Shown: piece after piece, positions 1 to 34,437 of the stretch
How positions within the stretch are numbered: the stretch's first letter is position 1
Layout of the letters: every line of letters begins with the position of its first letter
Virus record (IMG/VR): IMGVR_UViG_3300042541_001760
Location: 186,001-250,000 of that record
DNA length: 64,000 nucleotides
Direction: 5' to 3' (one strand)
The notes under the pieces: model-generated
The model's database searches: none
What the model was told of the DNA's origin: nothing
Seen by the model: only the letters and a program-made list of their open reading frames with translations
Translations under genes and position numbers: made by a program

Positions 1-45
1 CAAGAGGCGGTTAGAAAAACGGTGGAGAAATACTACAAAAAATAA
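1..45 (+). CDS. 3' end of an upstream gene (partial, QEAVRKTVEKYYKK*)
   Basis: Open frame from base 1 to TAA at 43-45, followed by a terminator; too short to assign. Confidence 0.45.
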   Translation, partial: QEAVRKTVEKYYKK

Positions 46-81
46 AACTATTTGTTAGGGGTTGACAGGTATGAAATTAAG

Positions 82-108
82 AGAGGGGAAATTTTTTCCC
101 CTTTTTTT
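82..108 (+). terminator. Intrinsic terminator
   Basis: GGGGAAA-TTT-TTTCCCC stem-loop followed by T7. Confidence 0.75.
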
Positions 109-109
109 G

Positions 110-117
110 TATTTATA
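110..117 (+). promoter_or_regulatory. Putative phage late promoter TATTTATA
   Basis: Motif recurs on the sense strand upstream of many structural-type genes; 14 nt before ATG 132. Confidence 0.6.
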
Positions 118-131
118 AGTAAAATATTACT

Positions 132-1175
132 ATGAATTTAGATAAAATGATTCAGAATTTTAATAATGGTGATGATGAATTCTTGTTGTTATTTGGTACT
201 AAGCATGACGAAATAATACATAGATTCTTATCACTAGTTAAACATAAGGGTAAATTAGACCAAATTTTGTGGAAAGATAATGATAATTTAGAGTATGGGG
301 TTAATAACGTACTACATTTTTTATTTAAAGAACCTGAATATAGAGAGAAGATAATTGATAACGCTATTGATTATTATAGTCGTGATGTGACTAAAGTTGG
401 TGATATAATTTATTTAAATTTTAATGATATTCGTGATTTGTCTGATTTTTTTTGTAATGAAGAATTCAGAAGAGGAGAGATGACTAGTGGTGAAATAGCG
501 AACTCCGTTTTATCTGATGATTTTTGGGAGCCTTATGATGACACGGTTAATGATTTATACGATGATGTCATTGAGGAATTGAGTCCTGAAAATCTTGATA
601 AATTAGGTAATATATTATTAAGACAAATTGGTAATACAAAAATAGAATCTGATGATGACGATTTAATATCAACTATTGCCGATGAACAAGGTCATCCCGA
701 ATATGTTATATTGGAAAAAGATGATATTACCAGAATATTAAAAGACAAATCGGCAACCAAAACGCTTTTTAGAAATGGTTATGTTGAAGGTGATTTAGAA
801 ACCGATTTGTATAATCTTCACGGAAATGCTTATAATGGTGCTTATATTAATGAGTTATATAAAATGGTTTGGAATGCTCTTGGGGACTTATTTGGAAAAG
901 GTGAATATGTTAAAGATGAAAATTCAAGAAGTAAAAACGAATATAGATTTGACATTACAGAATTATTTCCTTTAGTTATTGGTGATTTTATTGAATCTAA
1001 GATGGGTTATAGTGATAATATACAAAATTATTGGAGTTTTAATTCATTAGTAAATGAACTATTTAATTATAGTAGCAAATATGAATGTCTGAAATTAGGT
1101 AGAATACCTGATTACCCTGACCACATTGATGTTAGGAACAACTTAAACTCATCATTTGATGATTACATATACTAA
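132..1175 (+). CDS. Acidic hypothetical protein (347 aa)
   Basis: Long ORF with own putative late promoter; no recognisable family. Confidence 0.8.
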   Translation: MNLDKMIQNFNNGDDEFLLLFGTKHDEIIHRFLSLVKHKGKLDQILWKDNDNLEYGVNNVLHFLFKEPEYREKIIDNAIDYYSRDVTKVGDIIYLNFNDIRDLSDFFCNEEFRRGEMTSGEIANSVLSDDFWEPYDDTVNDLYDDVIEELSPENLDKLGNILLRQIGNTKIESDDDDLISTIADEQGHPEYVILEKDDITRILKDKSATKTLFRNGYVEGDLETDLYNLHGNAYNGAYINELYKMVWNALGDLFGKGEYVKDENSRSKNEYRFDITELFPLVIGDFIESKMGYSDNIQNYWSFNSLVNELFNYSSKYECLKLGRIPDYPDHIDVRNNLNSSFDDYIY

Positions 1176-1447
1176 GGATTAACTTTCCCGCAAATATTAA
1201 TTATTAATGACTCTTCTTCTGATGAAAGTTTATATCTATTATTAATTAAAGACATAACTTTCATATTAAAGTCCTCATCAGATTCTTTTGAAACTACATT
1301 GGATAACTTACTTGTTACGTTTGAGTTTTTTAAACACTCCATAATTACTTTATGATCCATATCATCCATTAATGATTCTAGCATTTCTCTTTTCTCTGAA
1401 CGAGTCATACCGTATAACATTTCGTCAACACTTATATCAATATCCAT
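1172..1447 (-). CDS. Hypothetical protein (91 aa)
   Basis: ORF converging on 132..1175 with 4-nt overlap. Confidence 0.7.
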   Translation of the reverse strand: MDIDISVDEMLYGMTRSEKREMLESLMDDMDHKVIMECLKNSNVTSKLSNVVSKESDEDFNMKVMSLINNRYKLSSEEESLIINICGKVNP

Positions 1448-1545
1448 ATTTTAGTTTTTAGTTAAACATATAAAATTATAGTTTTATTGTCAAATACTAT
1501 TTATCCCTAATTTTATTTTATCTATTAATTATCAAAACAATAGAT

Positions 1546-2346
1546 ATGAAATATATTAATTTAAATTCAAAAAAAGGTTTAGTAAATTTATTCGCCGATT
1601 ACATAGTTAAAGAGTTTAGTCACAATACTATGATACAAGTTTCAGATTGTGGGGCATTCTTCTTAGTCAAAGGTAAAACAGATAAAGAAGAGTATGTTGA
1701 TTTAAACGAAATAAAGAAAACATTCTTAAGTGACAATAAAAACAATTATCAATTTTTAGGTTTAGAGAATATTAATATCATTGATATTATTGAGTATGAT
1801 ACTGAAATCCTACCTAAAGATAGATGGCATTCGTTTTATCCCACTGAGAGACCTATATACACTCAATCTGTTATAGATAGACACGAAGACCTGATTAACA
1901 CAATAAACTCGTTAAATGAGGTTAATGGTAGGTCTGTTATTGAATCTGAGGAGGAGGTTATCGGTTTTGATTATTATGAATACCCATCTATGATTATAAC
2001 ATCAGAATTTCCTTATGGTTATGGTTTGGATACAGGTAGATTGGGTTACTACTATTCTGAATATATTGTCAATCATTTGTTTAACATTACCAACTCATCA
2101 AGTATTGATTTTAGATTCTCAAGTCAGGTTGATGATGATATGGAAGTTAAAATAGACATATCTTTATATGATAGTTTATTACCTAACGAATATATTAAAT
2201 CTATGGTGTTGGATGTATTTAATTTTGATGTGTCCGAACTTAAAAATGAATTACAATCTTATGACTTGTTGGATGACTTAAAGGATCCTTTTGGTAAGAA
2301 GCCTTGGTTGGTTAAGGATATGATTGGGGATATTGTTGTTATTTAA
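1546..2346 (+). CDS. Degenerate S-adenosylmethionine synthetase (MetK)-like protein lacking catalytic motifs
   Basis: Segments FFLVKGKTDKEEYVDLNEI, FPYGYG and VLDVFNFD...PFGKKPWLVKD resemble recalled MetK N-, central and C-terminal motifs; GHPDK and GGGAFSGKD absent. Confidence 0.5.
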   Translation: MKYINLNSKKGLVNLFADYIVKEFSHNTMIQVSDCGAFFLVKGKTDKEEYVDLNEIKKTFLSDNKNNYQFLGLENINIIDIIEYDTEILPKDRWHSFYPTERPIYTQSVIDRHEDLINTINSLNEVNGRSVIESEEEVIGFDYYEYPSMIITSEFPYGYGLDTGRLGYYYSEYIVNHLFNITNSSSIDFRFSSQVDDDMEVKIDISLYDSLLPNEYIKSMVLDVFNFDVSELKNELQSYDLLDDLKDPFGKKPWLVKDMIGDIVVI

Positions 2347-2683
2347 ATTTATGATTCCAACGGTGGATATCGTATTTATAAGTCCATAAAGGTGTTACCT
2401 CCTTTAATTTGTAAACCTCATCCAACCATTTTTTTATAGTTGATTGGATATCTCCGTAGTTAAGATGAAATAATAATTCAATTTTCGACCAAATATCGTC
2501 ATTGTGAATATAAACACGCTCAGTTTTCTTATCGTATTCCATTAAAACCTGATTATTATCATTTACATAATATATTGAGTCAGGATAATCCTTATGTTTC
2601 TTTTGTGTTAAATTACCAAAGTGCTTGTTTAACCACTTGATAACAACCCTCTCTAACTGATGTTCATTTACTTGTATGTTCAT
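2339..2683 (-). CDS. Paralog family protein, copy A (MNIQVN-x-QLERVVIKWLN family)
   Basis: Clear similarity to 2694..3038, 3035..3403 and 6750..7061. Confidence 0.85.
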   Translation of the reverse strand: MNIQVNEHQLERVVIKWLNKHFGNLTQKKHKDYPDSIYYVNDNNQVLMEYDKKTERVYIHNDDIWSKIELLFHLNYGDIQSTIKKWLDEVYKLKEVTPLWTYKYDIHRWNHKFK

Positions 2684-2693
2684 ATTCTATTTT

Positions 2694-3038
2694 TCAATTT
2701 CTAAGTTCTTCCCAATTGAAAATGGATGCGTTACTGTTTCTGATTGGTCTCACACCCTTCAATTTGTAAGTATCTTCCAACCAAACCTCAATAATTGATT
2801 TGATGTCATTGTGTCCAATGTGAAATATATTTTCCAAATGTGACCAAATATCACCATAATGAATATAGACATATTCACTTAGTTTAATGTATTGAAGTAT
2901 AACATTATTACTAGAATCCACATAAAATACCACATTAGGAAAATCCTTATGTTTCTTTGGTGTTAAGTTACCTAAGCGTTTGTTTAACCACTTGATGACA
3001 ACTCTCTCCATTTGATTTCTATTTACCTGTACGTTCAT
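2694..3038 (-). CDS. Paralog family protein, copy B
   Basis: Shares N-terminal MN(V/I)QVN..QxERVVIKWLN and C-terminal WLxxxYKLxxV motifs. Confidence 0.85.
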   Translation of the reverse strand: MNVQVNRNQMERVVIKWLNKRLGNLTPKKHKDFPNVVFYVDSSNNVILQYIKLSEYVYIHYGDIWSHLENIFHIGHNDIKSIIEVWLEDTYKLKGVRPIRNSNASIFNWEELRN

Positions 3039-3403
3039 ATTCTATTTTTTAATTTATAGGTCTCCTCCAACCAAATAAGGCCATCCGGCCAATTGAAATC
3101 ATTATCCATTGGTCTTACTCCCTCCAATTTGTATGTCTCTTTCAACCATACCTTCATAATTGAATGAATTACATGATAGTTAAGGTGAAATAACGATTCA
3201 ACTTTTCCCCAAATATGATTATAATCGATATAAAAATTTTCATACTCCGGATTGTATTCCATCATAACCTTATCATTAGAATTTACGTAAAATACTGAGT
3301 CAGGATAATATTTATGTTTCTTTTGCGTTAAATTACCAAAGTGATTGTTTAACCACTTGATAACAACCCTCTCTAACTGATGTTTATTTACTTGTATGTT
3401 CAT
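3035..3403 (-). CDS. Paralog family protein, copy C
   Basis: Same family; WLxETYKL motif present twice; ATGA-coupled to both neighbours. Confidence 0.85.
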   Translation of the reverse strand: MNIQVNKHQLERVVIKWLNNHFGNLTQKKHKYYPDSVFYVNSNDKVMMEYNPEYENFYIDYNHIWGKVESLFHLNYHVIHSIMKVWLKETYKLEGVRPMDNDFNWPDGLIWLEETYKLKNRI

Positions 3404-3996
3404 TTAATTAATAATATTTTACCATAAATATCTTTATACCCACGATTAAACCCCTTATATACTATATGGTATACGTAAACATCTTCCTGACATATTTGAC
3501 CCTTATAAGTTCCATTCCATTGTTTATTAATATCATCACTTTCAAATATTAATTCACCCCATCTATTAAATATTGTAATATTAAACTTATCAACACCGAA
3601 TCCATAAGCCCCGAAAGTTTCGTTTAGATTGTCATCATTTGGTGTAAATGCGTTTGGGACATAGATGCTTAACTCAGGACACCCCTCAACTTTTACAATC
3701 ACTTCGGTTTGTGAGATACAATTACCATTTGTGTATTGAGCAACTATGGTATACTGACCTGGATCATCCCACCTAACAAATAAAGTATTATCGTTTAATC
3801 CTTGTGCGTTCACACTAGGTTCTACTATCCAACGACTTTGATAACCCGGTAATCCATCAACCCAATATTTTTTATCAATATACAATGTATCACATAAATT
3901 TATTATCTGAGGTTCGTTACGTATCTGTGTGTTTAATGAACCACTTAATAATAAAATAAAGACAATTAATATTGTTTTTAAATATGGGTATGACAT
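3400..3996 (-). CDS. Exported protein with Ig/PKD-like domain and T9SS type-B (gliding motility-associated, CHU_C) C-terminal sorting domain
   Basis: Signal peptide ending LNT|Q; C-terminus IYVPNAFTPNDDNLNETF...IFNRWGELIFES...WNGTYKG...VYVY...GKILLIK. Confidence 0.9.
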   Translation of the reverse strand: MSYPYLKTILIVFILLLSGSLNTQIRNEPQIINLCDTLYIDKKYWVDGLPGYQSRWIVEPSVNAQGLNDNTLFVRWDDPGQYTIVAQYTNGNCISQTEVIVKVEGCPELSIYVPNAFTPNDDNLNETFGAYGFGVDKFNITIFNRWGELIFESDDINKQWNGTYKGQICQEDVYVYHIVYKGFNRGYKDIYGKILLIK

Positions 3997-3997
3997 T

Positions 3998-4564
3998 TTA
4001 ATCTGTGTATATAACCGGTGTTGATGGTGGTGGTGTTATCGTTATTGACCCACTACCACTCATAGGGCATCCATTAGCATCTGTTGATGTGAATGTGATT
4101 GGGTAAACTCCTGTCGCTAATCCTGTTGCGTTAAATACCGATCCGGTAACACCAGTTCCGGCAAATACAGGATTAGTCCCAAGTGGATTGGATGTTAAGT
4201 TTATTGTTCCGTTTCCTTGACATAAGGCATCAACTATAACAACAGGTATTGTTGGTGGTAGTACGGTTATCGTTGCCGAACTAGTTGAACTACATAAACC
4301 AATAGTTTTGGTTATGGTAATTGTGTATGTCCCCGCAACAGACCAAGTGACTTGTATTTGGTCACCACTTGATATTGATGTAAATGGAACTGCTGGTACT
4401 ATACTAAAAGTATATGTCGCCAATGGGTCAATAACTTGGTCACCATAAACTTGAACATCGTTCAAACAATAAGTGTTGTTATTTGCCGAATTCGGTGTTG
4501 GTACTTGTCCGTAACCTAATAGGGTTACCAATAAAAATCCAAGAATAATTATAATCTTTTTCAT
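3998..4564 (-). CDS. Exported two-Ig/PKD-like-domain protein
   Basis: Signal peptide GYG|Q; VTWSVAGTYTIT and GTGVTG..F...G.YPITFT.TDANGC motifs typical of Bacteroidota surface proteins. Confidence 0.8.
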   Translation of the reverse strand: MKKIIIILGFLLVTLLGYGQVPTPNSANNNTYCLNDVQVYGDQVIDPLATYTFSIVPAVPFTSISSGDQIQVTWSVAGTYTITITKTIGLCSSTSSATITVLPPTIPVVIVDALCQGNGTINLTSNPLGTNPVFAGTGVTGSVFNATGLATGVYPITFTSTDANGCPMSGSGSITITPPPSTPVIYTD

Positions 4565-4565
4565 A

Positions 4566-5942
4566 TTAATTTGTGTAAACTGATACTGTTATACCACCCG
4601 GTGGTATGTTTATTGTTTTATTTATTGTTGTTGATGTACAAGGTCCGTTAATGGTTAATGAAACATTATAAGTCCCTGATAATAAATATGCGTGAGTTGG
4701 ATTTTGTTGTATTGAAGTTTGACCATCACCAAAATTCCAAAAATACGTATATAAGTTATTCTGATTAACACAATTGTTAGTTATCGTAGGTGACTGAAAT
4801 GATGCGGTGGTGCAACTTATGGTTGGGTTGGGTAATATGTATTGGGGTTGGACATAAAATGACGCAAAGTTAGGTAATCCGAATCTACCTGCCCTACTCA
4901 CAAGTGGTATGGATAAGTCCGAGTAGTTACACCCGACTCCATAAACATTGGGATTATTTATAACGGATAATGATGTATTATTCCTCGCAACATAAACCTT
5001 ACCATCAGGTCCTAATTGAATTGACCCTATGAAAGCGCCTGCGTTTGATACGACTCTACGGCTAGCCTGTATCTGTGCTTGAGTTCCCGCACATAAATCC
5101 CATTGTAATAACATACCTTGGTTTGTCCCACCATATAATATTCTACCGTCAGGCGAGAATTCACATCCATAGATACCCGTCTCGTTTGATAGGGTAAATC
5201 CCCCTGATGCGAAACCTGTGGATGGGTCAAAATTATGTAACTCAATCTTATTCATTCCATAGTGACACGCCGCCAACCTTCTTCCGTTTGGTGATGCCTT
5301 TAATTGTCCATAAGCGGATTGGGGTACTCCTGATACAACAGACCCGGATATTGACCAAGTAGTAATACTAGGGACACCAACATTATCCACCAACCAAGAG
5401 GTAAATACATTTGTATTCCAATCGTGTGATAAGACCCAAACATCAACATTATTACAATGTCTGACGGCACATAACTTTTCACAGGATGGTGTTTTTAGTT
5501 GGGTATTCTTTGTTGTGACCGCACCTAACCCCACACTTAAACTCATATCAACAATTGAGTAACATATACCATTAACTCCAGCATCGTTATCCGAAGTGAA
5601 GATATAATATATGTTGGGTTGATTTGGTTTCTGAACTATGACGGCTGATTGTGTGGATGAAACATCACCGAATAAACCAGTACCATTTGTCATAACCAAA
5701 TGGTTTTTATTCCAAACGGTAATCCCGTTGGTATAGAATAATAGATTACCCAAATTATCTGATATGGTTGCCACCCCTTCAATAGTGGTTAAGGCTCCAT
5801 TGGTTAAAGCAACAGGAGACCCTGAGTTAAAGGTTATCCCCGCATTTGTCCCAAAATACCAATTAGTACTCGGACCGGGTATTTGTGAATATCCGATAAC
5901 ATAAAGTAATGAAAATAATATTATAAGTTTTAACTTTATCAT
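4566..5942 (-). CDS. Exported beta-propeller plus PKD domain protein
   Basis: Signal peptide GYS|Q; NWYFG...EGVATISD..GNLLFYTNG...NGTGL.G..SSTQSA N-terminus; PKD motif YFWNFGDG...NPTHAY..SGTYNVSLT. Confidence 0.85.
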   Translation of the reverse strand: MIKLKLIILFSLLYVIGYSQIPGPSTNWYFGTNAGITFNSGSPVALTNGALTTIEGVATISDNLGNLLFYTNGITVWNKNHLVMTNGTGLFGDVSSTQSAVIVQKPNQPNIYYIFTSDNDAGVNGICYSIVDMSLSVGLGAVTTKNTQLKTPSCEKLCAVRHCNNVDVWVLSHDWNTNVFTSWLVDNVGVPSITTWSISGSVVSGVPQSAYGQLKASPNGRRLAACHYGMNKIELHNFDPSTGFASGGFTLSNETGIYGCEFSPDGRILYGGTNQGMLLQWDLCAGTQAQIQASRRVVSNAGAFIGSIQLGPDGKVYVARNNTSLSVINNPNVYGVGCNYSDLSIPLVSRAGRFGLPNFASFYVQPQYILPNPTISCTTASFQSPTITNNCVNQNNLYTYFWNFGDGQTSIQQNPTHAYLLSGTYNVSLTINGPCTSTTINKTINIPPGGITVSVYTN

Positions 5943-6607
5943 TCCTTAATACGAATGGTTAGACCAACGTCTAATCCTATCATATAAGTATTAAATGAAT
6001 TGTCAATAACTATTGGTGTTAAATTTGTTCTACCATAAACTGATGTAGTTAGTCCAACACCCTCAATTATATTCATATACAAACCACCTCTAACAAAAAC
6101 CCCTAAATAAGTTTTAACCGTTTTATAATCGTATATTTCAACATCATATGTAAAATCATTACGATTTGTTATTATCCCATCACCAAATATCATATTTAAA
6201 GATGGACCTATTTCAAAATATAAACTTTGACCAATGGATGGGTAGTATGTCAATAAGGGAGATATGGAAACACCATCTATTTGTATTGTCTTATCAATAT
6301 ACTTTAACTCATTAAAATTAACACCATTCGGTATGATTCTAATATCCTGATTTATTCTTGTTTTATTTGTCTCCAATTTAATACCCCAAAATTTATTCTG
6401 ATAATAACCATTCTCAAAATATCTCGCAAACGAAAAACCATATGAACTAGCATAGGTTATTCTTCTTTCATTTCTTAGATCGGTAAATGATGTGTTCGGT
6501 ATGTTTAATGTTGTAATCCCTCGATTAAAATTACCACTAATGGTATAGACTTGGGATAAGAGTGGGGACGACAGTAATACGCATAAAACCAGTAAAAACT
6601 TTTTCAT
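5939..6607 (-). CDS. Outer-membrane beta-barrel protein (PorT-like, about 8 strands)
   Basis: Signal peptide LLS|Q; amphipathic strands, YFEIGPSLNMI motif, terminal strand IGLDVGLTIRI; 222 aa. Confidence 0.65.
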   Translation of the reverse strand: MKKFLLVLCVLLSSPLLSQVYTISGNFNRGITTLNIPNTSFTDLRNERRITYASSYGFSFARYFENGYYQNKFWGIKLETNKTRINQDIRIIPNGVNFNELKYIDKTIQIDGVSISPLLTYYPSIGQSLYFEIGPSLNMIFGDGIITNRNDFTYDVEIYDYKTVKTYLGVFVRGGLYMNIIEGVGLTTSVYGRTNLTPIVIDNSFNTYMIGLDVGLTIRIKE

Positions 6608-6660
6608 AAGATATAGTATATGTTAGTTTAGTTGCCATTCGTAATACGCACTGATTTTAC

Positions 6661-6668
6661 TATAAATA
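6661..6668 (-). promoter_or_regulatory. Putative late promoter TATTTATA driving the 6607-to-2339 operon
   Basis: Exact motif 53 nt upstream of ATG 6607, just downstream of a terminator. Confidence 0.6.
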
Positions 6669-6680
6669 TCTTAAAAACAA

Positions 6681-6705
6681 AAAATCCACTAAAAAAGTGG
6701 ATTTT
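6681..6705 (-). terminator. Intrinsic terminator
   Basis: AAAATCCACT-AAAAA-AGTGGATTTT perfect 10-bp stem with flanking T-run on minus strand. Confidence 0.75.
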
Positions 6706-6749
6706 ATTATTTACTTTATTAAATGTTTTATTACATTAGGTGATTTTTA

Positions 6750-7061
6750 CTAATCATAAGTGGCACCAAAAACTTCTTGAACGTCAATATCGTATGTTTC
6801 GTACATCCATTTTGGGACTATAGTTCTAACATCAACATAAGTTAATTTAAACATATTAACCAAACTCATAAGAATATCATTATTCACATGTAAAATACCA
6901 TTATCAGTATTATAATCCATCATCTGTTTATTATTATGGTTAAAATAAAATACCGTATCGGTAAAATATGAAATCTCTTTTAGTGTTAAGTTACCGTAGT
7001 GTTTATTTAACCACTTGATAACTACTCTTTCCAATTGATGTTTATTTACTTGTATGTCCAT
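6750..7061 (-). CDS. Paralog family protein, copy D
   Basis: MDIQVNKHQLERVVIKWLNKHYGNLT N-terminus. Confidence 0.85.
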   Translation of the reverse strand: MDIQVNKHQLERVVIKWLNKHYGNLTLKEISYFTDTVFYFNHNNKQMMDYNTDNGILHVNNDILMSLVNMFKLTYVDVRTIVPKWMYETYDIDVQEVFGATYD

Positions 7062-7065
7062 AATG

Positions 7066-7073
7066 TATAAATA
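7066..7073 (-). promoter_or_regulatory. Putative late promoter TATTTATA
   Basis: Exact motif 4 nt upstream of ATG 7061. Confidence 0.55.
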
Positions 7074-7076
7074 CCA

Positions 7077-7361
7077 TTAAAGACCAAAATGTTCCTTAAT
7101 GATATTAACACCCTCATCAATCTCGTTATAATCTCTCTCAGGCGCATATAAGTGAGATACAGGTTCATCATCAGGTGATTCTACAATCATAAAAGACGGA
7201 ACAAAATCATTACCTGTTATCTCCTTGAACATCTCGTATTCGTCCTCGTGTTCGTGGATGTCCCTAACAAAATAGTTAATATTTTCCTCGTTCAACCGGT
7301 CTTTCATCATCTGACAAAATGGACACCCATCCATTGTGAACAGAATTAGTAGTTTATCCAT
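7077..7361 (-). CDS. Glutaredoxin/thioredoxin-fold protein
   Basis: FTMDGCPFC active site and downstream VP motif. Confidence 0.85.
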   Translation of the reverse strand: MDKLLILFTMDGCPFCQMMKDRLNEENINYFVRDIHEHEDEYEMFKEITGNDFVPSFMIVESPDDEPVSHLYAPERDYNEIDEGVNIIKEHFGL

Positions 7362-7668
7362 TTATAATTTTACTTGATAAGTCGATTATTTCTTTTATCT
7401 GCATAATTCCAACCTTATTAAAAACTTCTTCACCGCTTTTAAATCCTTTTATAGTGGGAACTCCTCTAACACCTAACTGCATAGTTAATTCTGAATCGGA
7501 ATCCACATTATATTTATACACACTTAAATTTGTAATTTGTGATGAAGCACTCTCCAACATTGGCATCATAACTTTACACGGACCACACCACGGGGCATAG
7601 CAATCCAATATGAAATCTTCCCCCTTTTTAATCTTTTCTCTTACTTGTTCTGCGTTTAATTCAATCAT
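7354..7668 (-). CDS. trxA: Thioredoxin
   Basis: APWCGPCK active site, GVRGVPT motif, 104 aa. Confidence 0.95.
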   Translation of the reverse strand: MIELNAEQVREKIKKGEDFILDCYAPWCGPCKVMMPMLESASSQITNLSVYKYNVDSDSELTMQLGVRGVPTIKGFKSGEEVFNKVGIMQIKEIIDLSSKIING

Positions 7669-8012
7669 TTTATTTTTATTATTTGGTTTATTAAGAATGT
7701 TATTTCTTCAAGTGGTCTTGTTGAATCGTAATATAAATTCACATTGTATCTACTTTCATTTAACTTCCTTGAAAAATAAATATAGTAATTTTCATTAGTT
7801 AGTATAATACATTCTTTTATTTCTATTTTTCTTTCCTGTAGTGATTGCGGTGATAGTATAATATCTTTATATATTACGGATTTGACTAACTTAGTATTTT
7901 TATCAAAAAGTTCAGGTGTTATACTTAACTCATCACGATATGATAATTTAGTTAATAACTCTCCGTAAGTTTTTAAAAATTTTTTCTCTTTTTTAAAGTA
8001 TTTTTCTTCCAT
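7665..8012 (-). CDS. Hypothetical protein (115 aa)
   Basis: ORF coupled to neighbours. Confidence 0.7.
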   Translation of the reverse strand: MEEKYFKKEKKFLKTYGELLTKLSYRDELSITPELFDKNTKLVKSVIYKDIILSPQSLQERKIEIKECIILTNENYYIYFSRKLNESRYNVNLYYDSTRPLEEITFLINQIIKIK

Positions 8013-8014
8013 AA

Positions 8015-9709
8015 TTAGAAAATTATTGCGTTTTGGATTTCCCTATCTTGACTATCCGTTATGTATTTTACTTCGTCATTTAACCATATTAAATTACCTA
8101 CCCTACCCGTATACCAACCAGATTTAGAGTATAGTTCCACACCTTTTAATTTAACAACCAATTCAGGTAGTCCAAATATAAGGGGATTATTTAAAATCAC
8201 TATCCTTGCATCCAATTTACGAATGACTGACATCCAAGTTACATCCAACATCTCATTGAATTTACCCAACGCCTGAATTCTTCTGAACTCAATTCTATTT
8301 TTATTTTTGGTTACACGATACTCAATGGTTGCCCTGTCTTCTGAATTTACACCACTTTTTCTTAATGATATGATTAACGATTCCGCTCTTTGAACATATG
8401 TCCTAACACAATTGGATTGGACTCTTGACTCATCATTGTATTCAGATGTTGATGTCAAAATCACAGGATAATAATTTTCATTATTAAAGATTGGTGGAGT
8501 AACTCTATTTGTAAAATCTTCACTATAGAATCTGAAGAACTCACCCTTTTCATAACTCGCCAGCTTATCTGACCACAATACGTGTTCTCTATTAAAACTT
8601 TTTAAATCGTGAGCCTTCCACTTAATCGTTTCAAACTTGTTTAATCGGTTATAAAATGAAATGTGGTCATTAAACGTAATTAAATGACTTGTCCCATCCA
8701 TAATGAACATAAAACACTTTAATGCGTTTATCTTTTCATTTCTGTTTAAATCAAGTGGTGTTACATTTTCAATAATTTCATATGGTTTATGCCAATATTC
8801 TATAATACCGGTTAACACATCATCATCTTGTTGTCTTAAAAAATCCTCACCAAATTTATTTATTGCATACTTTAAATTATCGGTATTAACGTGAGTTACA
8901 TTATGTAATATCTTCTTTATCTTATCACCACTAAATCCATTAATTGACATATAAGTATCAATTAATTTAAACTTATTTTTCTTTAATTGTCTCTTGTTGG
9001 GTAATGGAAATTGCTTACTGAAAGAAGTCCAATTGTCGGGGTATTTAATACCTCTAACATCTAAATATCTTTTATAAATTAATTCATCAGGCGTATATAT
9101 GGACATAGTACTAACACCAAACTCATTGAAGAATATATCAAATACCTTATCTACTATCTTTCTTCTATCGTCATCGGAGGGATATTTAATTTCTTTATTA
9201 TCAGTTATCTGACTAAATATTAAGTCATTATATAGTTTCGCTATTGGTGTACAATAAAAAGCATTTCTTTTAACGACCTTCTTAGATTTTTTCTTTAGGT
9301 GATACCCTGATATTGTTCCATAGTATATGTCCCCCGTAGATATTTTATAAGTAATAAAATACATCATCGTTTTTTTTCTAAAGAATTTCTCACCTACCAT
9401 CCTTCTATAAGTTTTCCCATAAAATTTTATGGAAACTTTATCATCATTTCTTTCAACAACCAATAAATTATTAACCCTACCAAGTTCGCAAAGTGGATTG
9501 CCGTAATTTTCCAAGAAATCTTCCATCGTATCGGAAACTTTATCATATATAAAATCCCCGTTTTTTGTGCTGAAAGCCGAACGAAGCTCATCCCTCTTCA
9601 CTGGACTTGATGTCTTAAAAAAGTTAGTATGTACCTTATCATAAACTAATCTGAAAAGTTCTGTCCTGTTATCTTCGTGAATTTTAGTTGTTTCTTGTTT
9701 GGTCTCCAT
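8015..9709 (-). CDS. PcfJ-like domain protein
   Basis: C-terminal EYNDESRVQSNCVRTY...RATIEY motif; ATG at 9709 preferred over TTG at 9715. Confidence 0.7.
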   Translation of the reverse strand: METKQETTKIHEDNRTELFRLVYDKVHTNFFKTSSPVKRDELRSAFSTKNGDFIYDKVSDTMEDFLENYGNPLCELGRVNNLLVVERNDDKVSIKFYGKTYRRMVGEKFFRKKTMMYFITYKISTGDIYYGTISGYHLKKKSKKVVKRNAFYCTPIAKLYNDLIFSQITDNKEIKYPSDDDRRKIVDKVFDIFFNEFGVSTMSIYTPDELIYKRYLDVRGIKYPDNWTSFSKQFPLPNKRQLKKNKFKLIDTYMSINGFSGDKIKKILHNVTHVNTDNLKYAINKFGEDFLRQQDDDVLTGIIEYWHKPYEIIENVTPLDLNRNEKINALKCFMFIMDGTSHLITFNDHISFYNRLNKFETIKWKAHDLKSFNREHVLWSDKLASYEKGEFFRFYSEDFTNRVTPPIFNNENYYPVILTSTSEYNDESRVQSNCVRTYVQRAESLIISLRKSGVNSEDRATIEYRVTKNKNRIEFRRIQALGKFNEMLDVTWMSVIRKLDARIVILNNPLIFGLPELVVKLKGVELYSKSGWYTGRVGNLIWLNDEVKYITDSQDREIQNAIIF

Positions 9710-9713
9710 AGTC

Positions 9714-9748
9714 AAAAAAAAAGGAGTAGAAAACTAAATCTACTCCTT
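9714..9748 (-). terminator. Terminator-like hairpin in the leader of the PcfJ-like gene
   Basis: AAGGAGTAGA/TCTACTCCTT 10-bp stem followed by a T-run on the minus strand. Confidence 0.7.
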
Positions 9749-9749
9749 A

Positions 9750-9757
9750 CAAATATA
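9750..9757 (-). promoter_or_regulatory. Bacteroidota-type -7 promoter TATATTTG (TAnnTTTG)
   Basis: Exact match in intergenic region upstream of 9709. Confidence 0.7.
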
Positions 9758-9770
9758 CGAAAAAAATCTA

Positions 9771-10073
9771 TTAATTCAAACCAATTAATCCGTGATTTGT
9801 GGATTGAAAAACTTTATTTATTATAATAACAAGTTTCTCATTAGTTATGTCTCTCTTCTTAAGTTTAACCACAACTTCTATAATCTGATGTTGTGTTAAT
9901 GTTATATCCTCACCTTTATCGTAATTAAGAGTTGCCTGTTCTTTAAGTAAAGTATAGAACTCATCTTTATCAAGTTCACCAATTAAATCCATTAAATCGT
10001 TTGGATTGCTCTCAAAAAATTTAACAAGTTGGTTAATATAAATATCAATATCAACTCTATCCATATCAGTCAT
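9771..10073 (-). CDS. Hypothetical protein (100 aa)
   Basis: ORF only. Confidence 0.7.
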   Translation of the reverse strand: MTDMDRVDIDIYINQLVKFFESNPNDLMDLIGELDKDEFYTLLKEQATLNYDKGEDITLTQHQIIEVVVKLKKRDITNEKLVIIINKVFQSTNHGLIGLN

Positions 10074-10095
10074 AATTACAATCGTTTAATCGTTT

Positions 10096-11466
10096 TTAAT
10101 TATCAAGAAAAAAGTAACCATTACCTTGTGATATTAAATTTTCCCTAACCGATTCAGGTAAGGTTTCCTCTAACTTATCTCCTGAACCATAAATGTTAAG
10201 GAAGGTCAGGTCTTTTAAGTTTTCTATTGAACTTGGTAATGATTTTAATTGTTTGTTATTAGGTAGTATAAGATAACCTAAATTTGTTAGTTTTCCAAGT
10301 TCATCAGGTAATGATTTAACAATATTTTCTAATTGTAAAGTCGTTAAATTTGTAAATTCGCCTATTGATGCTGGAATGTCTATCGCAAGATCTTCTTTAG
10401 ATTTATTAATGAATGATAACATATCTATGTCTCTTGGTAAACTTTCAAACAATTCCTCAAAGCCATATAGAGCCACGAATTTACCCGCTGAACTATCAGG
10501 GTAAGTTATGTTAACTTGGTTCGTAGATTGATTAACCAATCCTTTTGCGAATTCAGGTTTGAAGTATTCTTTAAGGTCGGGTGCTTTATTATTTAAAAAA
10601 TCAACCAACTCAATTCTATGGTCTAATCTATCCATAAACTGATTAGATGGGAAGTGAAATTGGAATCTGTCTTGGGGTAATCCTGTTCTTCCTCCGACAG
10701 GTCCACCCTCATCGTTAGATAATAACACATAAAGAGGTCCGTCTTTAACATATCCCCTAAAATAACTTGAACTTGGTGGTGATGTACACCATCTTGATTC
10801 ACCCTTTTCGTAGTCATAATAACCACCATACCAAGATGCCGCTTCTTGACCTTTTTCACCCCCATCTGAAATCTTAACCACTGTATAGTTGTCTCCAACA
10901 TATTCAACGGTCGCACCAGGATGTGAAAAACCTTTTCTTTCTTTACGAATTTCTTTTTTAACTTCTGACTTAGCTAATTTATTCTTAATCTTCTCAGGTA
11001 GTTCAAAATTATTTAGGAATTTGAAAAGTTTAGTTGGTGTAAATTTATTGATATCTCTCCATACAACAGGAAAATATTGTTTGTATTTTGTGAATTTTTT
11101 AAGGTCATCTGTTAATTTAAACAAATCCTCCATAAATAAATCACGTGCTCTTTCAACACTACCTGAGTCGTCAGTTTCGGGACTCTCATAGTTCTTTAAC
11201 ATCCAATTAACATATTGACCCGGTTGAATCTTTTTTAAATTCTCAGGACTAAAATCCGCATCGTTAAAATCCGCAGGTTTTTTTGTGGTTGGATCGGCAA
11301 ATATGATATCTGCCAATTTATTTATATCCATTAAAGCTTTTGAGCCTTTACCGGGTATTACATCTTTCTTAGGTTTTGTATATTTGTCAATCAATACATC
11401 AAAACGACTTTGTTCCGTTAGAATATTACGTAACAATGTGTTTAATTTTATATTTTTAATTTTCAT
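10096..11466 (-). CDS. Protein with central WCTS domain and C-terminal leucine-rich repeats
   Basis: SRWCTS motif; IPASIGEFTNLTTLQL, LPDELGKLTNLGYLIL, LPSSIENLKDLTFLNI repeats. Confidence 0.85.
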   Translation of the reverse strand: MKIKNIKLNTLLRNILTEQSRFDVLIDKYTKPKKDVIPGKGSKALMDINKLADIIFADPTTKKPADFNDADFSPENLKKIQPGQYVNWMLKNYESPETDDSGSVERARDLFMEDLFKLTDDLKKFTKYKQYFPVVWRDINKFTPTKLFKFLNNFELPEKIKNKLAKSEVKKEIRKERKGFSHPGATVEYVGDNYTVVKISDGGEKGQEAASWYGGYYDYEKGESRWCTSPPSSSYFRGYVKDGPLYVLLSNDEGGPVGGRTGLPQDRFQFHFPSNQFMDRLDHRIELVDFLNNKAPDLKEYFKPEFAKGLVNQSTNQVNITYPDSSAGKFVALYGFEELFESLPRDIDMLSFINKSKEDLAIDIPASIGEFTNLTTLQLENIVKSLPDELGKLTNLGYLILPNNKQLKSLPSSIENLKDLTFLNIYGSGDKLEETLPESVRENLISQGNGYFFLDN

Positions 11467-11496
11467 ATCTATTATATATTTTGCTAAGTTATTAAA

Positions 11497-13311
11497 TTAA
11501 TACCAAATATAAAAACCGGGACCTTCTTCTTTCATCCTTGCTCTTACTTCTTCGGGTATGATTATATCAGGATTAGATCCCTCCAATAGGATGAAATCTA
11601 ACTCTTCTAATTTTGCTAATGATTTGGGTAATGACTTTAGTCTAGGGTTGTTGGGTAATCCTAAAACAGATAACCTACTTAGATTACCAATTGATTCGGG
11701 TAACTCCTCAACAACGCCAGTCAAACTTAAATTCTCAAGATTACTAAATCTATCTATGTCGTTTGGTATATCTATTTTTATTGACCCATCTTTACTCTTA
11801 TTCTTTATTACTAACTCAGTGATGGTGTCAGGTAATGAATCAAAAAGTTCTTTTAATCCATATAGGGCAATGTATTTACCTTCGTTTGATGATGGTAACT
11901 CAATTACTGCTGAGTCCTTGAATACAAAATTGGTTGCGAACTTAGTTTTAAGGGATTCTTTTAGTTTGGCCATCATAGGTAAATTTAGTATGGCTATCTC
12001 ACCTTCACTTAAACTACCAATATTCTTGTTAGATAAAGCCTCAACTTTTTTCTTTAGGTAGTATTTCATTGTGTCAGAATCAGAGTTCCTAACTTGACCT
12101 GCGGTTAATTCGTGACCTAAAGCAATATATTTCTTTCTTAAATTTGGTGTTAGGCTATTGAATTGTTCATCACTTACTTTCCTATTAACAATCTCTAACC
12201 AATACTCAACCTCATTTTCATTAGCGAAAGTATCAAAGAGATTATCACCGACTTTTGAGTTTCTTATTTTATCTATAAGTACTTTTTCGTCAGATGTTAA
12301 TGGTTTTGGTTTGAATACGCCCTCCAATCCTTTTAATTTAGGTATTTTAGTTAATATCTCACTCCAAGGAATATTGTTATGACCTGAATATCTACCTGAG
12401 TTTGTACCATCCGCCAATGACATATCCCCATCAGGGTCAACCAATATAACAACCGCAAAGTTTACATCAGAATAATCCTTATCTTGGTCTATCACATAGT
12501 ATAATGTTCTCTCGTTGTCTAATCTATAGTTATAGAATAAGTTTGATGTTCCCTCACGAGATGTACACCAACTTCTACCATTCTTTAACTTAATACACTG
12601 GTCTCTCGTCTTTGGTTGGAATATTAATAAGTTATTCTCATTGTATACTTCCTCAATATCAGATACATCTGTTTTTGTTTCTGTGTCGTCGGATTTAACT
12701 GACGCATCAATATAATGTTCAAAATCTGTAAAACTTAGTGAGGTTGCCAATGGCATTTGCTCATATAACTGATTAAAGTTATCCAAGTACGCTTGAACAT
12801 AATACATTATTACATCTTCCGTTAGATTTGGATTCTCTTTCTTAAATTTCTCTGACAATATTTTTAGTAGAAACTTGGGGTAAGATTGGTCAATAACTTT
12901 TTGTAAATCCAAGAATTTATACTTGGTGATGTCCTTACCTTTACCGAATGCGTCCTCAATCTCCAAAAACTTTCTAATGGTTTTCTTAAGAGACACATTT
13001 TCAATACCCCCTTCTTTCTTTTTGAACTCCTTAAAAAGATCGGATTCTCTTTTTTGAGTTCTCTTTAAAGCAATAATGTTTTTTAATTCACTATATGAAT
13101 ATCTTGATAAATCTCTTTTCTCAACAGGTAACCCGTTTTTGTATTTTTCAAAATCGTCAATGTATCCACCTATGGTTTTTTCGTCATCCTTAGTATCTTG
13201 TAAAAATTTACCGATTAACTTCGCTTTTATTTTATCGGATACTTCTTTAAGTAACTTTTTAGGTAACGGGCTTTCAACCACAACGGACGATAATAAATTT
13301 ACTAACTTCAT
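11497..13311 (-). CDS. Paralogous WCTS-domain plus leucine-rich-repeat protein
   Basis: RSWCTS motif; LPESIGNLSRLSVLGL, LPKSLAKLEELDFILL repeats; C-terminal region aligns with 10096..11466. Confidence 0.85.
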   Translation of the reverse strand: MKLVNLLSSVVVESPLPKKLLKEVSDKIKAKLIGKFLQDTKDDEKTIGGYIDDFEKYKNGLPVEKRDLSRYSYSELKNIIALKRTQKRESDLFKEFKKKEGGIENVSLKKTIRKFLEIEDAFGKGKDITKYKFLDLQKVIDQSYPKFLLKILSEKFKKENPNLTEDVIMYYVQAYLDNFNQLYEQMPLATSLSFTDFEHYIDASVKSDDTETKTDVSDIEEVYNENNLLIFQPKTRDQCIKLKNGRSWCTSREGTSNLFYNYRLDNERTLYYVIDQDKDYSDVNFAVVILVDPDGDMSLADGTNSGRYSGHNNIPWSEILTKIPKLKGLEGVFKPKPLTSDEKVLIDKIRNSKVGDNLFDTFANENEVEYWLEIVNRKVSDEQFNSLTPNLRKKYIALGHELTAGQVRNSDSDTMKYYLKKKVEALSNKNIGSLSEGEIAILNLPMMAKLKESLKTKFATNFVFKDSAVIELPSSNEGKYIALYGLKELFDSLPDTITELVIKNKSKDGSIKIDIPNDIDRFSNLENLSLTGVVEELPESIGNLSRLSVLGLPNNPRLKSLPKSLAKLEELDFILLEGSNPDIIIPEEVRARMKEEGPGFYIWY

Positions 13312-33999: not shown

Positions 34000-34437
34000 T
34001 TATTTAATAGAATATGTTAAAATATCACTATATACTCCTTGAGTGTGTGGTAATTCAGGTGTAAATTCGAGACAAATTAAAATATTTAATTGTTTCCCAA
34101 CATCTTTACATAGAAAAAAAGTATAGTATTCTTCGTTTACTTTTGCGAAAACCTTAAAATGATCCCCATCATTAGAAATCACATTTATCATTTTACACTT
34201 AATAGACCAATCACTTTCATTACTCATATTAATAACTTGATTATTGAAATCAAATTCATATGTTAATTTGTATGGATACAGTAAGGTGTTTTTTATAGAA
34301 TCTTTCTGTACCGCCTCATTGAAGTCCATATTTGTTGGTATTTGGAAAATTGAGTAATTCTCCATAACTATGGTTGTTACTTGCGAATGAAGATTAAAAC
34401 AAAAAAGAAAAAGTACTGAGAGAATGAGAGTTTTCAT
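34000..34437 (-). CDS. Secreted hypothetical protein
   Basis: Signal peptide MKTLILSVLFLFCFNLHS|Q. Confidence 0.7.
   Translation of the reverse strand: MKTLILSVLFLFCFNLHSQVTTIVMENYSIFQIPTNMDFNEAVQKDSIKNTLLYPYKLTYEFDFNNQVINMSNESDWSIKCKMINVISNDGDHFKVFAKVNEEYYTFFLCKDVGKQLNILICLEFTPELPHTQGVYSDILTYSIK

What the first reader, a model, noticed from the sequence alone, without database searches (positions are those of the whole stretch)
3400..6668. Phage operon encoding a T9SS type-B cargo, two companion exported proteins and an OM beta-barrel
Seen: four translationally coupled genes, each with its own Sec-type signal peptide, sit behind the putative late motif TATTTATA. They encode an OM beta-barrel, a beta-propeller plus PKD protein, a two-Ig protein and an Ig protein ending in a gliding-motility-associated (type B, CHU_C) CTD. 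Established: type-B CTD proteins such as SprB are exported by the Bacteroidota T9SS, usually with a PorP/SprF partner. Inference: the phage routes its own surface complex through the host T9SS. Possible roles are receptor masking or superinfection exclusion, jamming the translocon or gliding machinery, or changing adhesion of infected cells. I am not aware of a characterised phage-encoded T9SS substrate.
Basis: partly seen in the sequence, partly recalled or inferred. Interest (0 to 1): 0.9.

Follow-up and report, generated by a model that had tools for sequence, protein, structure and literature searches.

The report
Phage-borne split T9SS surface-protein cassette
A jumbo phage of Bacteroidota carries a conserved cassette that looks like a host cell-surface adhesin cut into three separately exported pieces, only the last of which keeps the address tag for the host's type IX secretion system, plus a small outer-membrane barrel; this suggests the phage remodels the surface of the cell it infects, but what it gains is untested.

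Summary
Four tightly packed minus-strand genes (6607-3400) each begin with a Bacteroidota-type signal peptide. They sit behind a terminator and a recurrent TATTTATA upstream motif. The last protein (198 aa) passes both curated type-B CTD models (PF13585, TIGR04131). The 458-aa protein is a confidently modelled 7-bladed beta-propeller plus PKD. The 188-aa protein is probably two Ig/PKD-like domains. The 222-aa protein is an OmpX/OmpA-like 8-stranded barrel by transitive homology; it shows no detectable PorP/SprF relationship. The window is a real 261-kb phage contig, and the cassette recurs in at least four independent samples, so it is not a chimera.

New finding: in bacteria the same propeller, Ig repeats and type-B CTD lie in one 560-2,200-aa polypeptide. 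The phage trio maps colinearly onto it. The split form makes one well-supported clade nested among the fused bacterial proteins. It occurs as a mobile cassette in at least 10 unrelated viral contigs and one prophage.

Most likely this is a host adhesin captured and split by phages. The CTD piece would leave through the host T9SS using a host PorP/SprF shuttle. Whether the pieces reassemble, and what the phage gains, is inferred. Phage-encoded type-A T9SS cargo has already been reported from sequence analysis, so this is a new variant of a known kind.

The parts
6681..6705 (-). Intrinsic-terminator hairpin (10-bp stem, T-run) ending the upstream unit
   Evidence: An equivalent hairpin with a different sequence sits at the same place in L004.
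6661..6668 (-). TATTTATA promoter-like motif, 54 nt upstream of the first ATG
   Evidence: The motif is enriched upstream of genes across the window and is conserved in L004 and L103-L106. Its temporal class is unknown.
5939..6607 (-). g222: signal peptide plus a small outer-membrane beta-barrel (OMP_b-brl_2 / OmpX-OmpA-like, about 8 strands)
   Evidence: The family is narrow: 9 clusters in 1.84 billion proteins. No detectable PorP/SprF relationship.
4833..5873 (-). g458 (whole gene 4566-5942): 7-bladed YVTN/WD40-like beta-propeller 'head', residues about 24-370, after a signal peptide (residues 1-19, Gln at +1)
   Evidence: AF2 pLDDT 90.2. 1L0Q is the top hit by fold and by sequence profile. 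The domain is homologous to the N-terminal domain of bacterial type-B cargo.
4605..4829 (-). g458 PKD domain (residues about 372-446)
   Evidence: PKD_4 45.3 bits, PKD 34.9 bits.
4569..4604 (-). g458 C-terminal tail PPGGITVSVYTN, unstructured in the monomer model
   Evidence: pLDDT below 50. The tail aligns to the linker plus first strand of the next repeat in fused bacterial proteins. It co-varies with the g188 tail across phage lineages.
3998..4564 (-). g188: signal peptide plus two Ig/PKD-like domains with conserved Cys pairs; C-terminal tail ...PVIYTD
   Evidence: Sub-threshold PKD/Ig hits. It aligns to the middle Ig repeats of fused bacterial proteins. Orthologues are listed.
3667..3927 (-). 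g198 (whole gene 3400-3996): N-terminal Ig-like domain after a signal peptide
   Evidence: It aligns contiguously with the last Ig/PKD domain plus CTD of fused bacterial proteins.
3403..3663 (-). g198 T9SS type-B C-terminal sorting domain (residues 112-198)
   Evidence: PF13585 56.6 bits against a cut-off of 27. TIGR04131 53.4 bits against 35, covering 2-83 of 85 profile positions. 31 of 35 conserved columns are kept. It matches the C-terminus of GhpA, PDB 9FLP.
2339..3403 (-). Three small paralogous genes (122, 114 and 114 aa). The first is ATGA-coupled to g198, so they are probably co-transcribed. A fourth copy lies at 6750-7061.
   Evidence: Copy number downstream of the cassette varies (0, 2 or 3) among near-identical contigs. 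Function unknown.

Best explanation
The cassette is a phage 'moron' derived from a Bacteroidota cell-surface protein of the T9SS type-B class, with the layout signal peptide, beta-propeller head, PKD/Ig stalk, type-B CTD. In the phage lineage this single polypeptide exists as three separate genes, each with its own new signal peptide.

Proposed mechanism:
1. All four proteins are exported by Sec and folded in the periplasm. Even numbers of conserved cysteines per domain suggest disulfides.
2. The 198-aa Ig+CTD piece is recognised by the host SprA translocon and by a host PorP/SprF-type shuttle. It is then held on the cell surface, as orphan type-B cargo are in F. johnsoniae.
3. The propeller-PKD and two-Ig pieces, which lack a CTD, associate with it. 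Their dangling C-terminal strands probably complement the next piece. This would rebuild a short adhesin-like structure.
4. The 222-aa protein inserts into the outer membrane as an independent or anchoring barrel, in the manner of lambda Lom. It is specific to this phage lineage.

Net effect: the infected cell's surface is remodelled. The most likely payoff is altered adhesion or receptor availability (a superinfection-exclusion-type benefit).

Shown: the domain identities, the homology to and colinearity with fused bacterial cargo, the phage context, the spread of the cassette and purifying selection. Inferred: T9SS export, use of a host shuttle, reassembly of the pieces and the physiological role.
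For: - The CTD is above curated thresholds and keeps its conserved motifs.
- Signal peptides with Gln at +1 occur on all pieces and are conserved across homologues.
- In 52 of the 104 sequences in the propeller tree (76 of them from genome or MAG loci, some truncated at contig ends), the propeller and the type-B CTD lie in one ORF. The 50 with the strongest propeller match were the targets of the colinearity test below.
- Colinearity: g458 maps to the N-terminus, g188 to the middle Ig repeats and g198 to the extreme C-terminus. All three pieces hit 6 of these 50 proteins; g458 and g198 alone hit another 41.
- The 13 viral split propellers form one clade (SH-aLRT 99). Its sister group holds the prophage copy and two fused 2,162- and 2,231-aa proteins. 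The whole group is nested among fused bacterial proteins.
- The trio is conserved in at least 10 viral contigs whose flanks share nothing with the window, with two different gene orders. It also sits between the terminase and portal genes of a prophage.
- dN/dS is 0.13-0.30 and GC3 is phage-like.
- Literature: type-B cargo are adhesins. 3 of 12 in F. johnsoniae lack an adjacent shuttle gene and share an orphan SprF-like shuttle. The CTD alone is sufficient for secretion and targeting (PMC12618676).
- Phage resistance in Flavobacterium maps to gliding and T9SS genes (PMC9804748, bioRxiv 10.1101/2020.10.02.323337; titles only, papers not opened).
- The tails of g458 and g188 are unstructured in the monomer model, align to the first strand of the next repeat in fused proteins, and co-vary between lineages.
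Against: - No experiment; the host is unknown.
- Two of the three soluble pieces have no CTD, and co-export of a non-covalent complex through the T9SS has no precedent that I know of.
- Several phages carry the propeller gene with no Ig+CTD gene next to it (L006, L092, L097-L099; in L099 a CTD match lies about 5 kb downstream). Hymenobacteraceae have stand-alone propellers. The head may therefore act without surface display.
- No phage PorP/SprF was found in the 64 kb searched, and shuttle-CTD pairing is specific.
- The barrel is absent from all other trio-bearing phages, so it is not an integral part of the module.
- dS is near saturation, so dN/dS values are rough.
- The tail covariation could instead reflect gene conversion between paralogous Ig domains.
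Confidence: 0.55

Rival explanations
1. Independent pieces. Only the 198-aa protein uses the T9SS, for example as a small decoy that competes for a host PorP/SprF shuttle and so lowers display of the homologous host adhesin. The propeller-PKD and two-Ig proteins would work on their own in the periplasm or after lysis. The genes would be neighbours only because of common descent.
For: The g458 and g188 proteins lack any CTD. Propeller-only arrangements exist in phages L006, L092 and L097-L099. Stand-alone propellers exist in Hymenobacteraceae chromosomes. The propeller is far more conserved (82% identity) than the CTD piece (45%) between the window and L004, which suggests different constraints. 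Shuttle-CTD pairing is specific and saturable in principle.
Against: The three genes stay adjacent through at least two gene-order permutations and across unrelated phage backbones. The tails co-vary. A pure decoy would need neither the head nor the stalk pieces.
Confidence: 0.28
2. The 222-aa barrel is a miniature, phage-specific PorP/SprF-type shuttle or anchor dedicated to the 198-aa cargo. The cassette would then be self-sufficient.
For: It is the first gene of the unit and is ATGA-coupled to the propeller gene. Bacterial type-B cargo genes are often next to a shuttle gene (L014 and L053; PMC12618676). It diverges as fast as the CTD piece (49% against 45% identity to L004).
Against: There is no sequence or profile similarity to PorP/SprF: the only aligned stretch is the signal peptide, at 9.7% probability. 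Its relatives belong to PF13568 OMP_b-brl_2. The model has about 8 strands and matches OmpX/Ail/OmpA/OmpW, whereas the PorP/SprF proteins found here are much longer (297-366 aa). It is absent from all other trio-bearing phages. A distant relative lies beside a gp32 gene with no trio in view.
Confidence: 0.08
3. Decaying remnant: a captured host adhesin gene broken by stop codons and on its way to loss.
For: The three ORFs are colinear with a single bacterial ORF.
Against: Each piece has gained a complete signal peptide that is conserved across lineages. Gene order is permuted in some phages, which a simple interrupted ORF cannot produce. dN/dS is 0.13-0.30. The split form makes up a large clade, including more than 100 protein clusters of about 460 aa at 51-96% identity.
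Confidence: 0.02
4. Assembly chimera, or a virion decoration protein set that is not secreted at all.
For: Ig-like and propeller domains are common on virions (one search finds generic phage propellers). GC is raised to 0.38 in two of the genes.
Against: The same cassette with the same flanks is assembled independently in at least 4 samples and in the 82%-identical relative L004. GC3 is phage-like, so the GC rise comes from amino-acid composition. Sec signal peptides and a T9SS CTD are incompatible with cytoplasmic virion assembly.
Confidence: 0.03

Closest known systems
Bacteroidota T9SS type-B cargo (SprB-class adhesins; TIGR04131/PF13585) with PorP/SprF shuttles
   Same: The 198-aa protein has a Sec signal peptide and a bona fide type-B CTD at its extreme C-terminus. 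The trio is homologous to, and colinear with, single-chain bacterial cargo of the form propeller, PKD/Ig repeats, type-B CTD. Some of those bacterial genes are followed by a PorP/SprF gene.
   Different: It is encoded by a phage. It is split into three polypeptides, of which only one has the CTD. The stalk is very short. No PorP/SprF gene is nearby. Secretion is untested.
Phage-encoded T9SS type-A cargo ('Cryophage', Bellas et al. 2020, PMC7468147; T9SS sorting-domain ORFs near crAss-BACON genes, PMC6949934)
   Same: These are phage genes with a T9SS sorting domain, presumed to hijack the host secretion system. They are variable, moron-like genes.
   Different: Those have type-A (PorV-dependent) CTDs on single-chain enzymes or PA14/BACON proteins. 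Here the CTD is type B, the cargo is adhesin-like, and the architecture is a split multi-gene one. None of these cases has been tested experimentally.
Lambda Lom / Ail-OmpX family and other phage-encoded outer-membrane 'morons'
   Same: g222 is a small phage-encoded outer-membrane beta-barrel with a signal peptide. The best fold matches of its low-confidence model are Ail, OmpX, OmpA and OmpW.
   Different: There is no sequence-level match to the Ail/Lom family. Its distant relatives fall in PF13568 (OMP_b-brl_2), a Bacteroidota-typical family. The phage is jumbo and its lifestyle is unknown.
Methanosarcina mazei surface-layer protein fragment 1L0Q (tandem YVTN beta-propeller + PKD)
   Same: It has the same two-domain layout as g458 and is the best hit both by profile (E 1.3e-20) and by fold (E 2.6e-15).
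   Different: It is an archaeal S-layer component with 16% identity. No functional inference follows beyond 'extracellular surface module'.
Strand-complemented fibres of Bacteroidota and Proteobacteria (type V pili, chaperone-usher pili)
   Same: As an idea only: subunits that end in a free beta-strand which completes the Ig-like fold of the next subunit. This would explain the dangling, co-varying tails of g458 and g188.
   Different: There is no homology and no evidence of polymerisation. This is a hypothesis drawn from tail sequence and a low-pLDDT tail.

Membership tests
T9SS type-B CTD cargo (TIGR04131 / PF13585 CHU_C) | The C-terminal domain matches the curated HMMs above their cut-offs | tested here: met
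   PF13585 56.6 bits (cut-off 27). TIGR04131 53.4 bits (cut-off 35), covering residues 112-196 of 198.
T9SS type-B CTD cargo (TIGR04131 / PF13585 CHU_C) | Conserved CTD motifs are retained (motifs A-E are needed for secretion, PMC12618676) | tested here: met
   31 of 35 columns that are at least 60% conserved among 87 homologues carry the consensus residue. These include PNAFTPN, IFNRWGELIF, W-x-G and VYV. The mapping onto the paper's motifs A-E is by eye.
T9SS type-B CTD cargo (TIGR04131 / PF13585 CHU_C) | N-terminal Sec signal peptide | tested here: met
   A hydrophobic core and Gln at +1; third of 68 window ORFs for N-terminal hydrophobicity. This is heuristic; no SignalP was run.
T9SS type-B CTD cargo (TIGR04131 / PF13585 CHU_C) | Cognate PorP/SprF-like shuttle gene adjacent | tested here: not met
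   None was found in the window or in viral flanks with a local 6-sequence HMM at E<=10. This feature is not obligatory: 3 of 12 F. johnsoniae type-B cargo are orphans served by Fjoh_1677. The rest of the 261-kb contig was not searched.
T9SS type-B CTD cargo (TIGR04131 / PF13585 CHU_C) | Secretion depends on the T9SS | not testable with these tools
   This needs expression in wild-type and T9SS-mutant Bacteroidota.
PorP/SprF shuttle (PF11751) - for g222 | Sequence or profile similarity to PorP/SprF | tested here: not met
   No Pfam hit. hhalign of the barrel family against six PorP/SprF proteins aligns only the signal peptide, probability 9.7%.
OMP_b-brl_2 (PF13568) small OM beta-barrels - for g222 | HMM match above the gathering score | tested here: inconclusive
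   g222 itself has no hit. 7 of 12 family members hit at E<=0.1; four distant relatives score above the 27-bit cut-off (best 45.9 bits). The AF2 model is all-beta with about 8 long strands but pLDDT 47. Foldseek finds Ail, OmpX, OmpA and OmpW at TM 0.35-0.57.
PKD domain (PF18911/PF00801) - g458 | HMM match above the gathering score | tested here: met
   PKD_4 45.3 bits (cut-off 27); PKD 34.9 bits (cut-off 23.5).
7-bladed YVTN/WD40-like beta-propeller - g458 | Propeller fold | tested here: met
   AF2 pLDDT 90.2, pTM 0.84. Top PDB matches are 1L0Q, then Gbeta, WRAP-T and lactonase-like 7-bladed propellers. The profile hits 2YMU and 1L0Q. The blade count comes from the matches and was not counted by hand.
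Ig/PKD-like repeats - g188 | HMM match above the gathering score | tested here: inconclusive
   PKD_4 20.1 bits (cut-off 27). Orthologues hit PKD_6 (6e-11), Ig_7 'CHU_C associated' and Bact_surface_Ig-like. It aligns at 30-35% to the Ig repeats of fused cargo.

The most novel reading that the evidence does not exclude
The three fragments are an obligate split adhesin. Each upstream piece would donate its free C-terminal strand to complete the first Ig-like domain of the next piece in the periplasm. The resulting non-covalent complex would cross the T9SS translocon on the single type-B CTD of the last piece. That would be piggyback secretion, which to my knowledge is not known for the T9SS, and it would put a phage-built adhesin on the infected cell.
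Probability: 0.18. Interest if true: 0.82.

Novelty: new variant of a known kind. Interest (0 to 1): 0.62.

Why it matters
Type-B T9SS cargo and their PorP/SprF shuttles are only now being dissected, and T9SS- and gliding-linked surface components are tied to phage susceptibility in Flavobacterium. This cassette is compact, widespread and phage-borne, and it contains a minimal type-B cargo (one Ig domain plus the CTD). That makes it a natural probe for three questions:
- Which host shuttle accepts a foreign CTD?
- Can the T9SS export non-covalent assemblies?
- How do phages of Bacteroidota rewire the host surface during infection (exclusion, adhesion, gliding)?

It also documents an unusual evolutionary event: a multi-domain secreted protein split into separately exported pieces, fixed, and spread among unrelated phages.

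Tried and rejected
- Nucleotide search of window 1-12,000 against 50,697 GenBank phage records found no match.
- tblastn of g458 against the same set found no match.
- PHROGs gave nothing for any of the four proteins. NCBIfam gave nothing for g458, g188 or g222.
- PorP/SprF was looked for in three ways: Pfam on g222, a local HMM over all window and viral-flank ORFs, and hhalign. All were negative.
- Downstream neighbours of the bacterial fused genes were checked as possible relatives of the barrel. They are heterogeneous (response regulators, lipoproteins, PorP/SprF) and unrelated to g222.
- Read-through or frameshift fusion of the pieces is rejected. Each piece has its own conserved signal peptide, and gene order is permuted in other phages.
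- Chimeric assembly, recent bacterial insertion and pseudogene decay are rejected.
- Fold search of the propeller against viral structures returned only generic propellers.
- No other type-B CTD was found in the window with a purpose-built HMM. Pfam on ten further ORFs, including the other ORFs with signal-peptide-like starts, gave no CTD or other T9SS-related hit. A Pfam scan of every window ORF for type-A CTDs was not done.
- There are no tRNAs in the window.
- Literature searches for type-B CTDs in phages returned nothing.

Full report
**What is in the sequence**

Four minus-strand ORFs lie between 6607 and 3400: g222, g458, g188 and g198. g222 and g458 overlap by ATGA. The next two junctions are single-nucleotide spacers. 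g198 in turn overlaps by ATGA the first of three small paralogous genes at 3403-2339. The unit is therefore probably seven genes long, not four.

Upstream, a 10-bp hairpin with a T-run (6705-6681) is followed by TATTTATA (6668-6661), 54 nt before the g222 start.

The motif is real. Half of its 29 copies lie in the 3.5% of the window that is intergenic and within 100 nt of a same-strand start. It outnumbers every other 8-mer of the same composition in that position, and it has a purine-rich 5' extension. The terminator-plus-motif arrangement recurs upstream of the orthologous gene in L004, with a different hairpin sequence. Nothing shows that the motif is 'late'.

**The four proteins**

All four N-termini look like Bacteroidota signal peptides with Gln at +1. 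They are among the seven most hydrophobic N-termini of 68 window ORFs. This pattern, including the invariant Gln, is conserved in the homologues.

- g198: residues 112-196 match PF13585 (56.6 bits, cut-off 27) and TIGR04131 (53.4 bits, cut-off 35). 31 of 35 conserved CTD columns carry the consensus residue. The domain also matches the C-terminus of the Aureispira grappling-hook protein GhpA.
- g458: a PKD domain above threshold and a high-confidence AF2 model (pLDDT 90.2). The best structural and profile match is 1L0Q, a tandem YVTN propeller plus PKD from an archaeal S-layer protein. Generic 7-bladed propellers follow.
- g188: only sub-threshold PKD/Ig hits, although its orthologues hit PKD_6, Ig_7 ('CHU_C associated') and Bact_surface_Ig-like.
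- g222: no direct family hit. Its family is tiny (9 clusters among 1.84 billion representatives). Its distant members belong to PF13568 OMP_b-brl_2. A low-confidence all-beta model best matches Ail, OmpX, OmpA and OmpW.

**Phage context and reality of the cassette**

The window is 100% identical to IMG/VR contig IMGVR_UViG_3300042541_001760 (261 kb). It encodes a baseplate wedge protein, an SbcC-like nuclease, a virion structural protein, RNR, primase, DnaJ and DNA methylases.

The same four genes, with the same thioredoxin, glutaredoxin and LRR-protein flanks, are assembled on 18 contigs from at least four independent samples. They also occur in a relative, L004, whose proteins are 45-82% identical.

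GC3 of the four genes is within 1 SD of the other window genes. The GC rise in g458 and g188 lies in codon positions 1 and 2. dN/dS against L004 is 0.13-0.30, although dS is near saturation. A chimera, a recent insert and a decaying pseudogene are therefore all excluded.

**The key finding: a split cargo**

A scan of one genome per species found at least 593 loci encoding the propeller, almost all in Bacteroidota. In the 80 loci fetched, the propeller is usually the N-terminal domain of a single 560-2,200-aa ORF that ends in a type-B CTD. In 52 of the 104 sequences in the tree, the propeller and the CTD share one ORF.

I searched the three phage proteins separately against the 50 fused proteins with the strongest propeller match:
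- g458 maps to the N-terminus.
- g188 maps to the middle Ig repeats.
- g198 maps to the last Ig domain plus the CTD.
- All three pieces hit 6 of the 50; g458 and g198 alone hit another 41.

A PorP/SprF gene (PF11751) follows the fused gene in some loci (L014, L053). Within ±8 kb this holds for only a few of the 80 loci.

In a maximum-likelihood tree of 104 propeller domains, the 13 split copies from viral contigs form one clade (SH-aLRT 99). Its sister group contains a split prophage copy and two fused proteins of 2,162 and 2,231 aa. The whole group is nested among fused bacterial proteins.

The simplest reading is one capture of a host type-B cargo gene, fission into three genes that each gained a signal peptide, and then spread among phages.

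**Spread among phages**

The trio occurs in at least 10 IMG/VR contigs. Two gene orders are seen: propeller / 2-Ig / Ig-CTD, and 2-Ig / Ig-CTD / propeller. Every piece keeps its own signal peptide. Apart from L004, the flanks of these contigs share no detectable protein with the window, so the trio behaves as a mobile cassette.

It also lies between the terminase and portal genes of a prophage-like region in a 4.2-Mb chromosome. Some phages, including contigs of about 200 and 640 kb, carry the propeller gene with no Ig+CTD gene beside it. In L099 a CTD match lies about 5 kb downstream.

The barrel is confined to the window's own lineage. One distant relative sits beside a gp32 gene.

A different megaphage, LR745206.1, encodes an unsplit 732-aa protein with a signal peptide and a type-B CTD.

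**How it most likely works**

Established background from PMC12618676:
- Type-B cargo are adhesins.
- Each CTD needs a PorP/SprF-type shuttle.
- Orphan cargo without an adjacent shuttle gene share an orphan host shuttle.

On that basis g198 is expected to be taken through the host translocon and held at the surface by a host shuttle. No phage shuttle is needed, and none was found.

g458 and g188 have no CTD. Their C-terminal tails (PPGGITVSVYTN and PPSTPVIYTD) have three notable properties:
- They are unstructured in the monomer model.
- They align to the linker plus first strand of the next repeat in fused proteins.
- They co-vary between the two proteins across phage lineages: YTN/YTD, FTN/FTN, IHN/QHN, NHN/EHN, NLN/QIN.

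This suggests, but does not show, reassembly by strand complementation.

The head is the most conserved part (82% identity to L004, against 45% for g198 and 49% for g222). That argues that its binding activity, and not merely competition for a shuttle, is what selection maintains.

I therefore favour a phage-directed remodelling of the infected cell's surface with a short adhesin-like assembly, and g222 as an accessory Lom-like outer-membrane protein. Phage resistance in Flavobacterium is repeatedly linked to gliding and T9SS genes (titles only; papers not opened). Altered receptor availability (an exclusion-type benefit) and altered adhesion are therefore the leading roles. I cannot separate them.

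**Comparison with what is known, and novelty**

g198 passes every membership test for type-B cargo that could be run here, except the non-obligatory adjacency of a shuttle gene. g222 fails the PorP/SprF test.

Phage-encoded T9SS cargo has been described from sequence for type-A CTDs (PMC7468147; also PMC6949934). The general idea is therefore not new. I found no report of type-B CTDs in phages, nor of a split cargo. All close homologues are named 'hypothetical' or 'gliding motility-associated-like' by their sources.

I rate this a new variant of a known kind, of moderate to high interest. All functional steps are still inferred.

Noticed in passing
window 2339-2683, 2694-3038, 3035-3403, 6750-7061 (all minus strand): Four paralogous small genes (103-122 aa, N-terminus MNIQVNKHQLERVVIKWLN...) flank the cassette. 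The number of copies downstream of g198 is 0, 2 or 3 in otherwise near-identical contigs (L103-L106), and in L004 all copies lie upstream. No Pfam hit; only a weak phrog_218 'head closure' hit (E 9.5e-4).
   Followed up: partly
window-wide, e.g. 7066, 13330, 19366, 23649, 27855, 40116, 41800, 48989, 61371 (minus strand); 110, 33251, 33267, 41846 (plus strand): (A/G)(A/G)TATTTATA recurs 0-54 nt upstream of many gene starts, often straight after the previous stop codon or a terminator. It is probably this phage's main promoter element. It is the reverse complement of the T4 late box TATAAATA. It also sits behind a hairpin upstream of the propeller gene of an unrelated viral contig (L094).
   Followed up: partly
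g458 residues 447-458 (window 4569-4604) and g188 residues 179-188 (window 4001-4030); orthologues in L004, L089-L095: The C-terminal tails of the propeller-PKD and two-Ig proteins end in the same short motif within each phage but differ between phages (YTN/YTD, FTN/FTN, IHN/QHN, NHN/EHN, NLN/QIN). They also resemble the first strand of the type-B CTD (IYVPN). The cause could be strand donation, a shared recognition signal or gene conversion; it is unexplained.
   Followed up: partly
window 34000-34437 (minus strand): Another small ORF (145 aa) has a Bacteroidota-type signal peptide (MKTLILSVLFLFCFNLHSQ...). No family hit.
   Followed up: partly
window 10096-11466 and 11497-13311 (minus strand): Two adjacent paralogous proteins (456 and 604 aa) have weak C-terminal leucine-rich-repeat hits (LRR_14). 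They are conserved next to the cassette in all close relatives.
   Followed up: no
window 52789-58992 (minus strand): A 2,067-aa protein in the baseplate/structural region has sub-threshold 7-bladed propeller (Lactonase-type) hits. This is a second, unrelated propeller in the same phage, with no signal peptide noted.
   Followed up: no
window 7077-7668 (minus strand): A glutaredoxin-like and a thioredoxin-like gene lie directly upstream of the cassette unit. An RNR large subunit is at 61452-63866.
   Followed up: no
L101 (LR745206.1, 634.8-kb megaphage) 3333-5531: A 732-aa single-chain protein with a signal peptide and a type-B CTD (local HMM E 2e-31). The record has four CTD-like places, and LR756502.1 has three. 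Type-B CTD proteins therefore exist in at least one other phage lineage.
   Followed up: partly
L006 15432-16643 (642.8-kb contig) and L102 17499-18548: Very large phage-like contigs carry the stand-alone propeller gene. L006 also encodes a 403-aa PKD + Por_Secre_tail (type-A CTD) protein, and L102 encodes a 349-aa PKD protein. T9SS-tagged genes may be common in huge phages of Bacteroidota.
   Followed up: no
L021, L033, L034, L037, L039, L048, L060, L067 (Pontibacter, Adhaeribacter, Rufibacter): Hymenobacteraceae carry a stand-alone propeller of about 380 aa with a signal peptide and no PKD or CTD. In the three loci examined (L021, L039, L060) the same conserved gene of about 325 aa lies just downstream, and in L021 and L060 the other nearby ORFs also resemble chromosomal rather than phage genes (by N-terminal sequence, from memory; not searched). 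This is a bacterial precedent for the head acting without a T9SS tag.
   Followed up: partly
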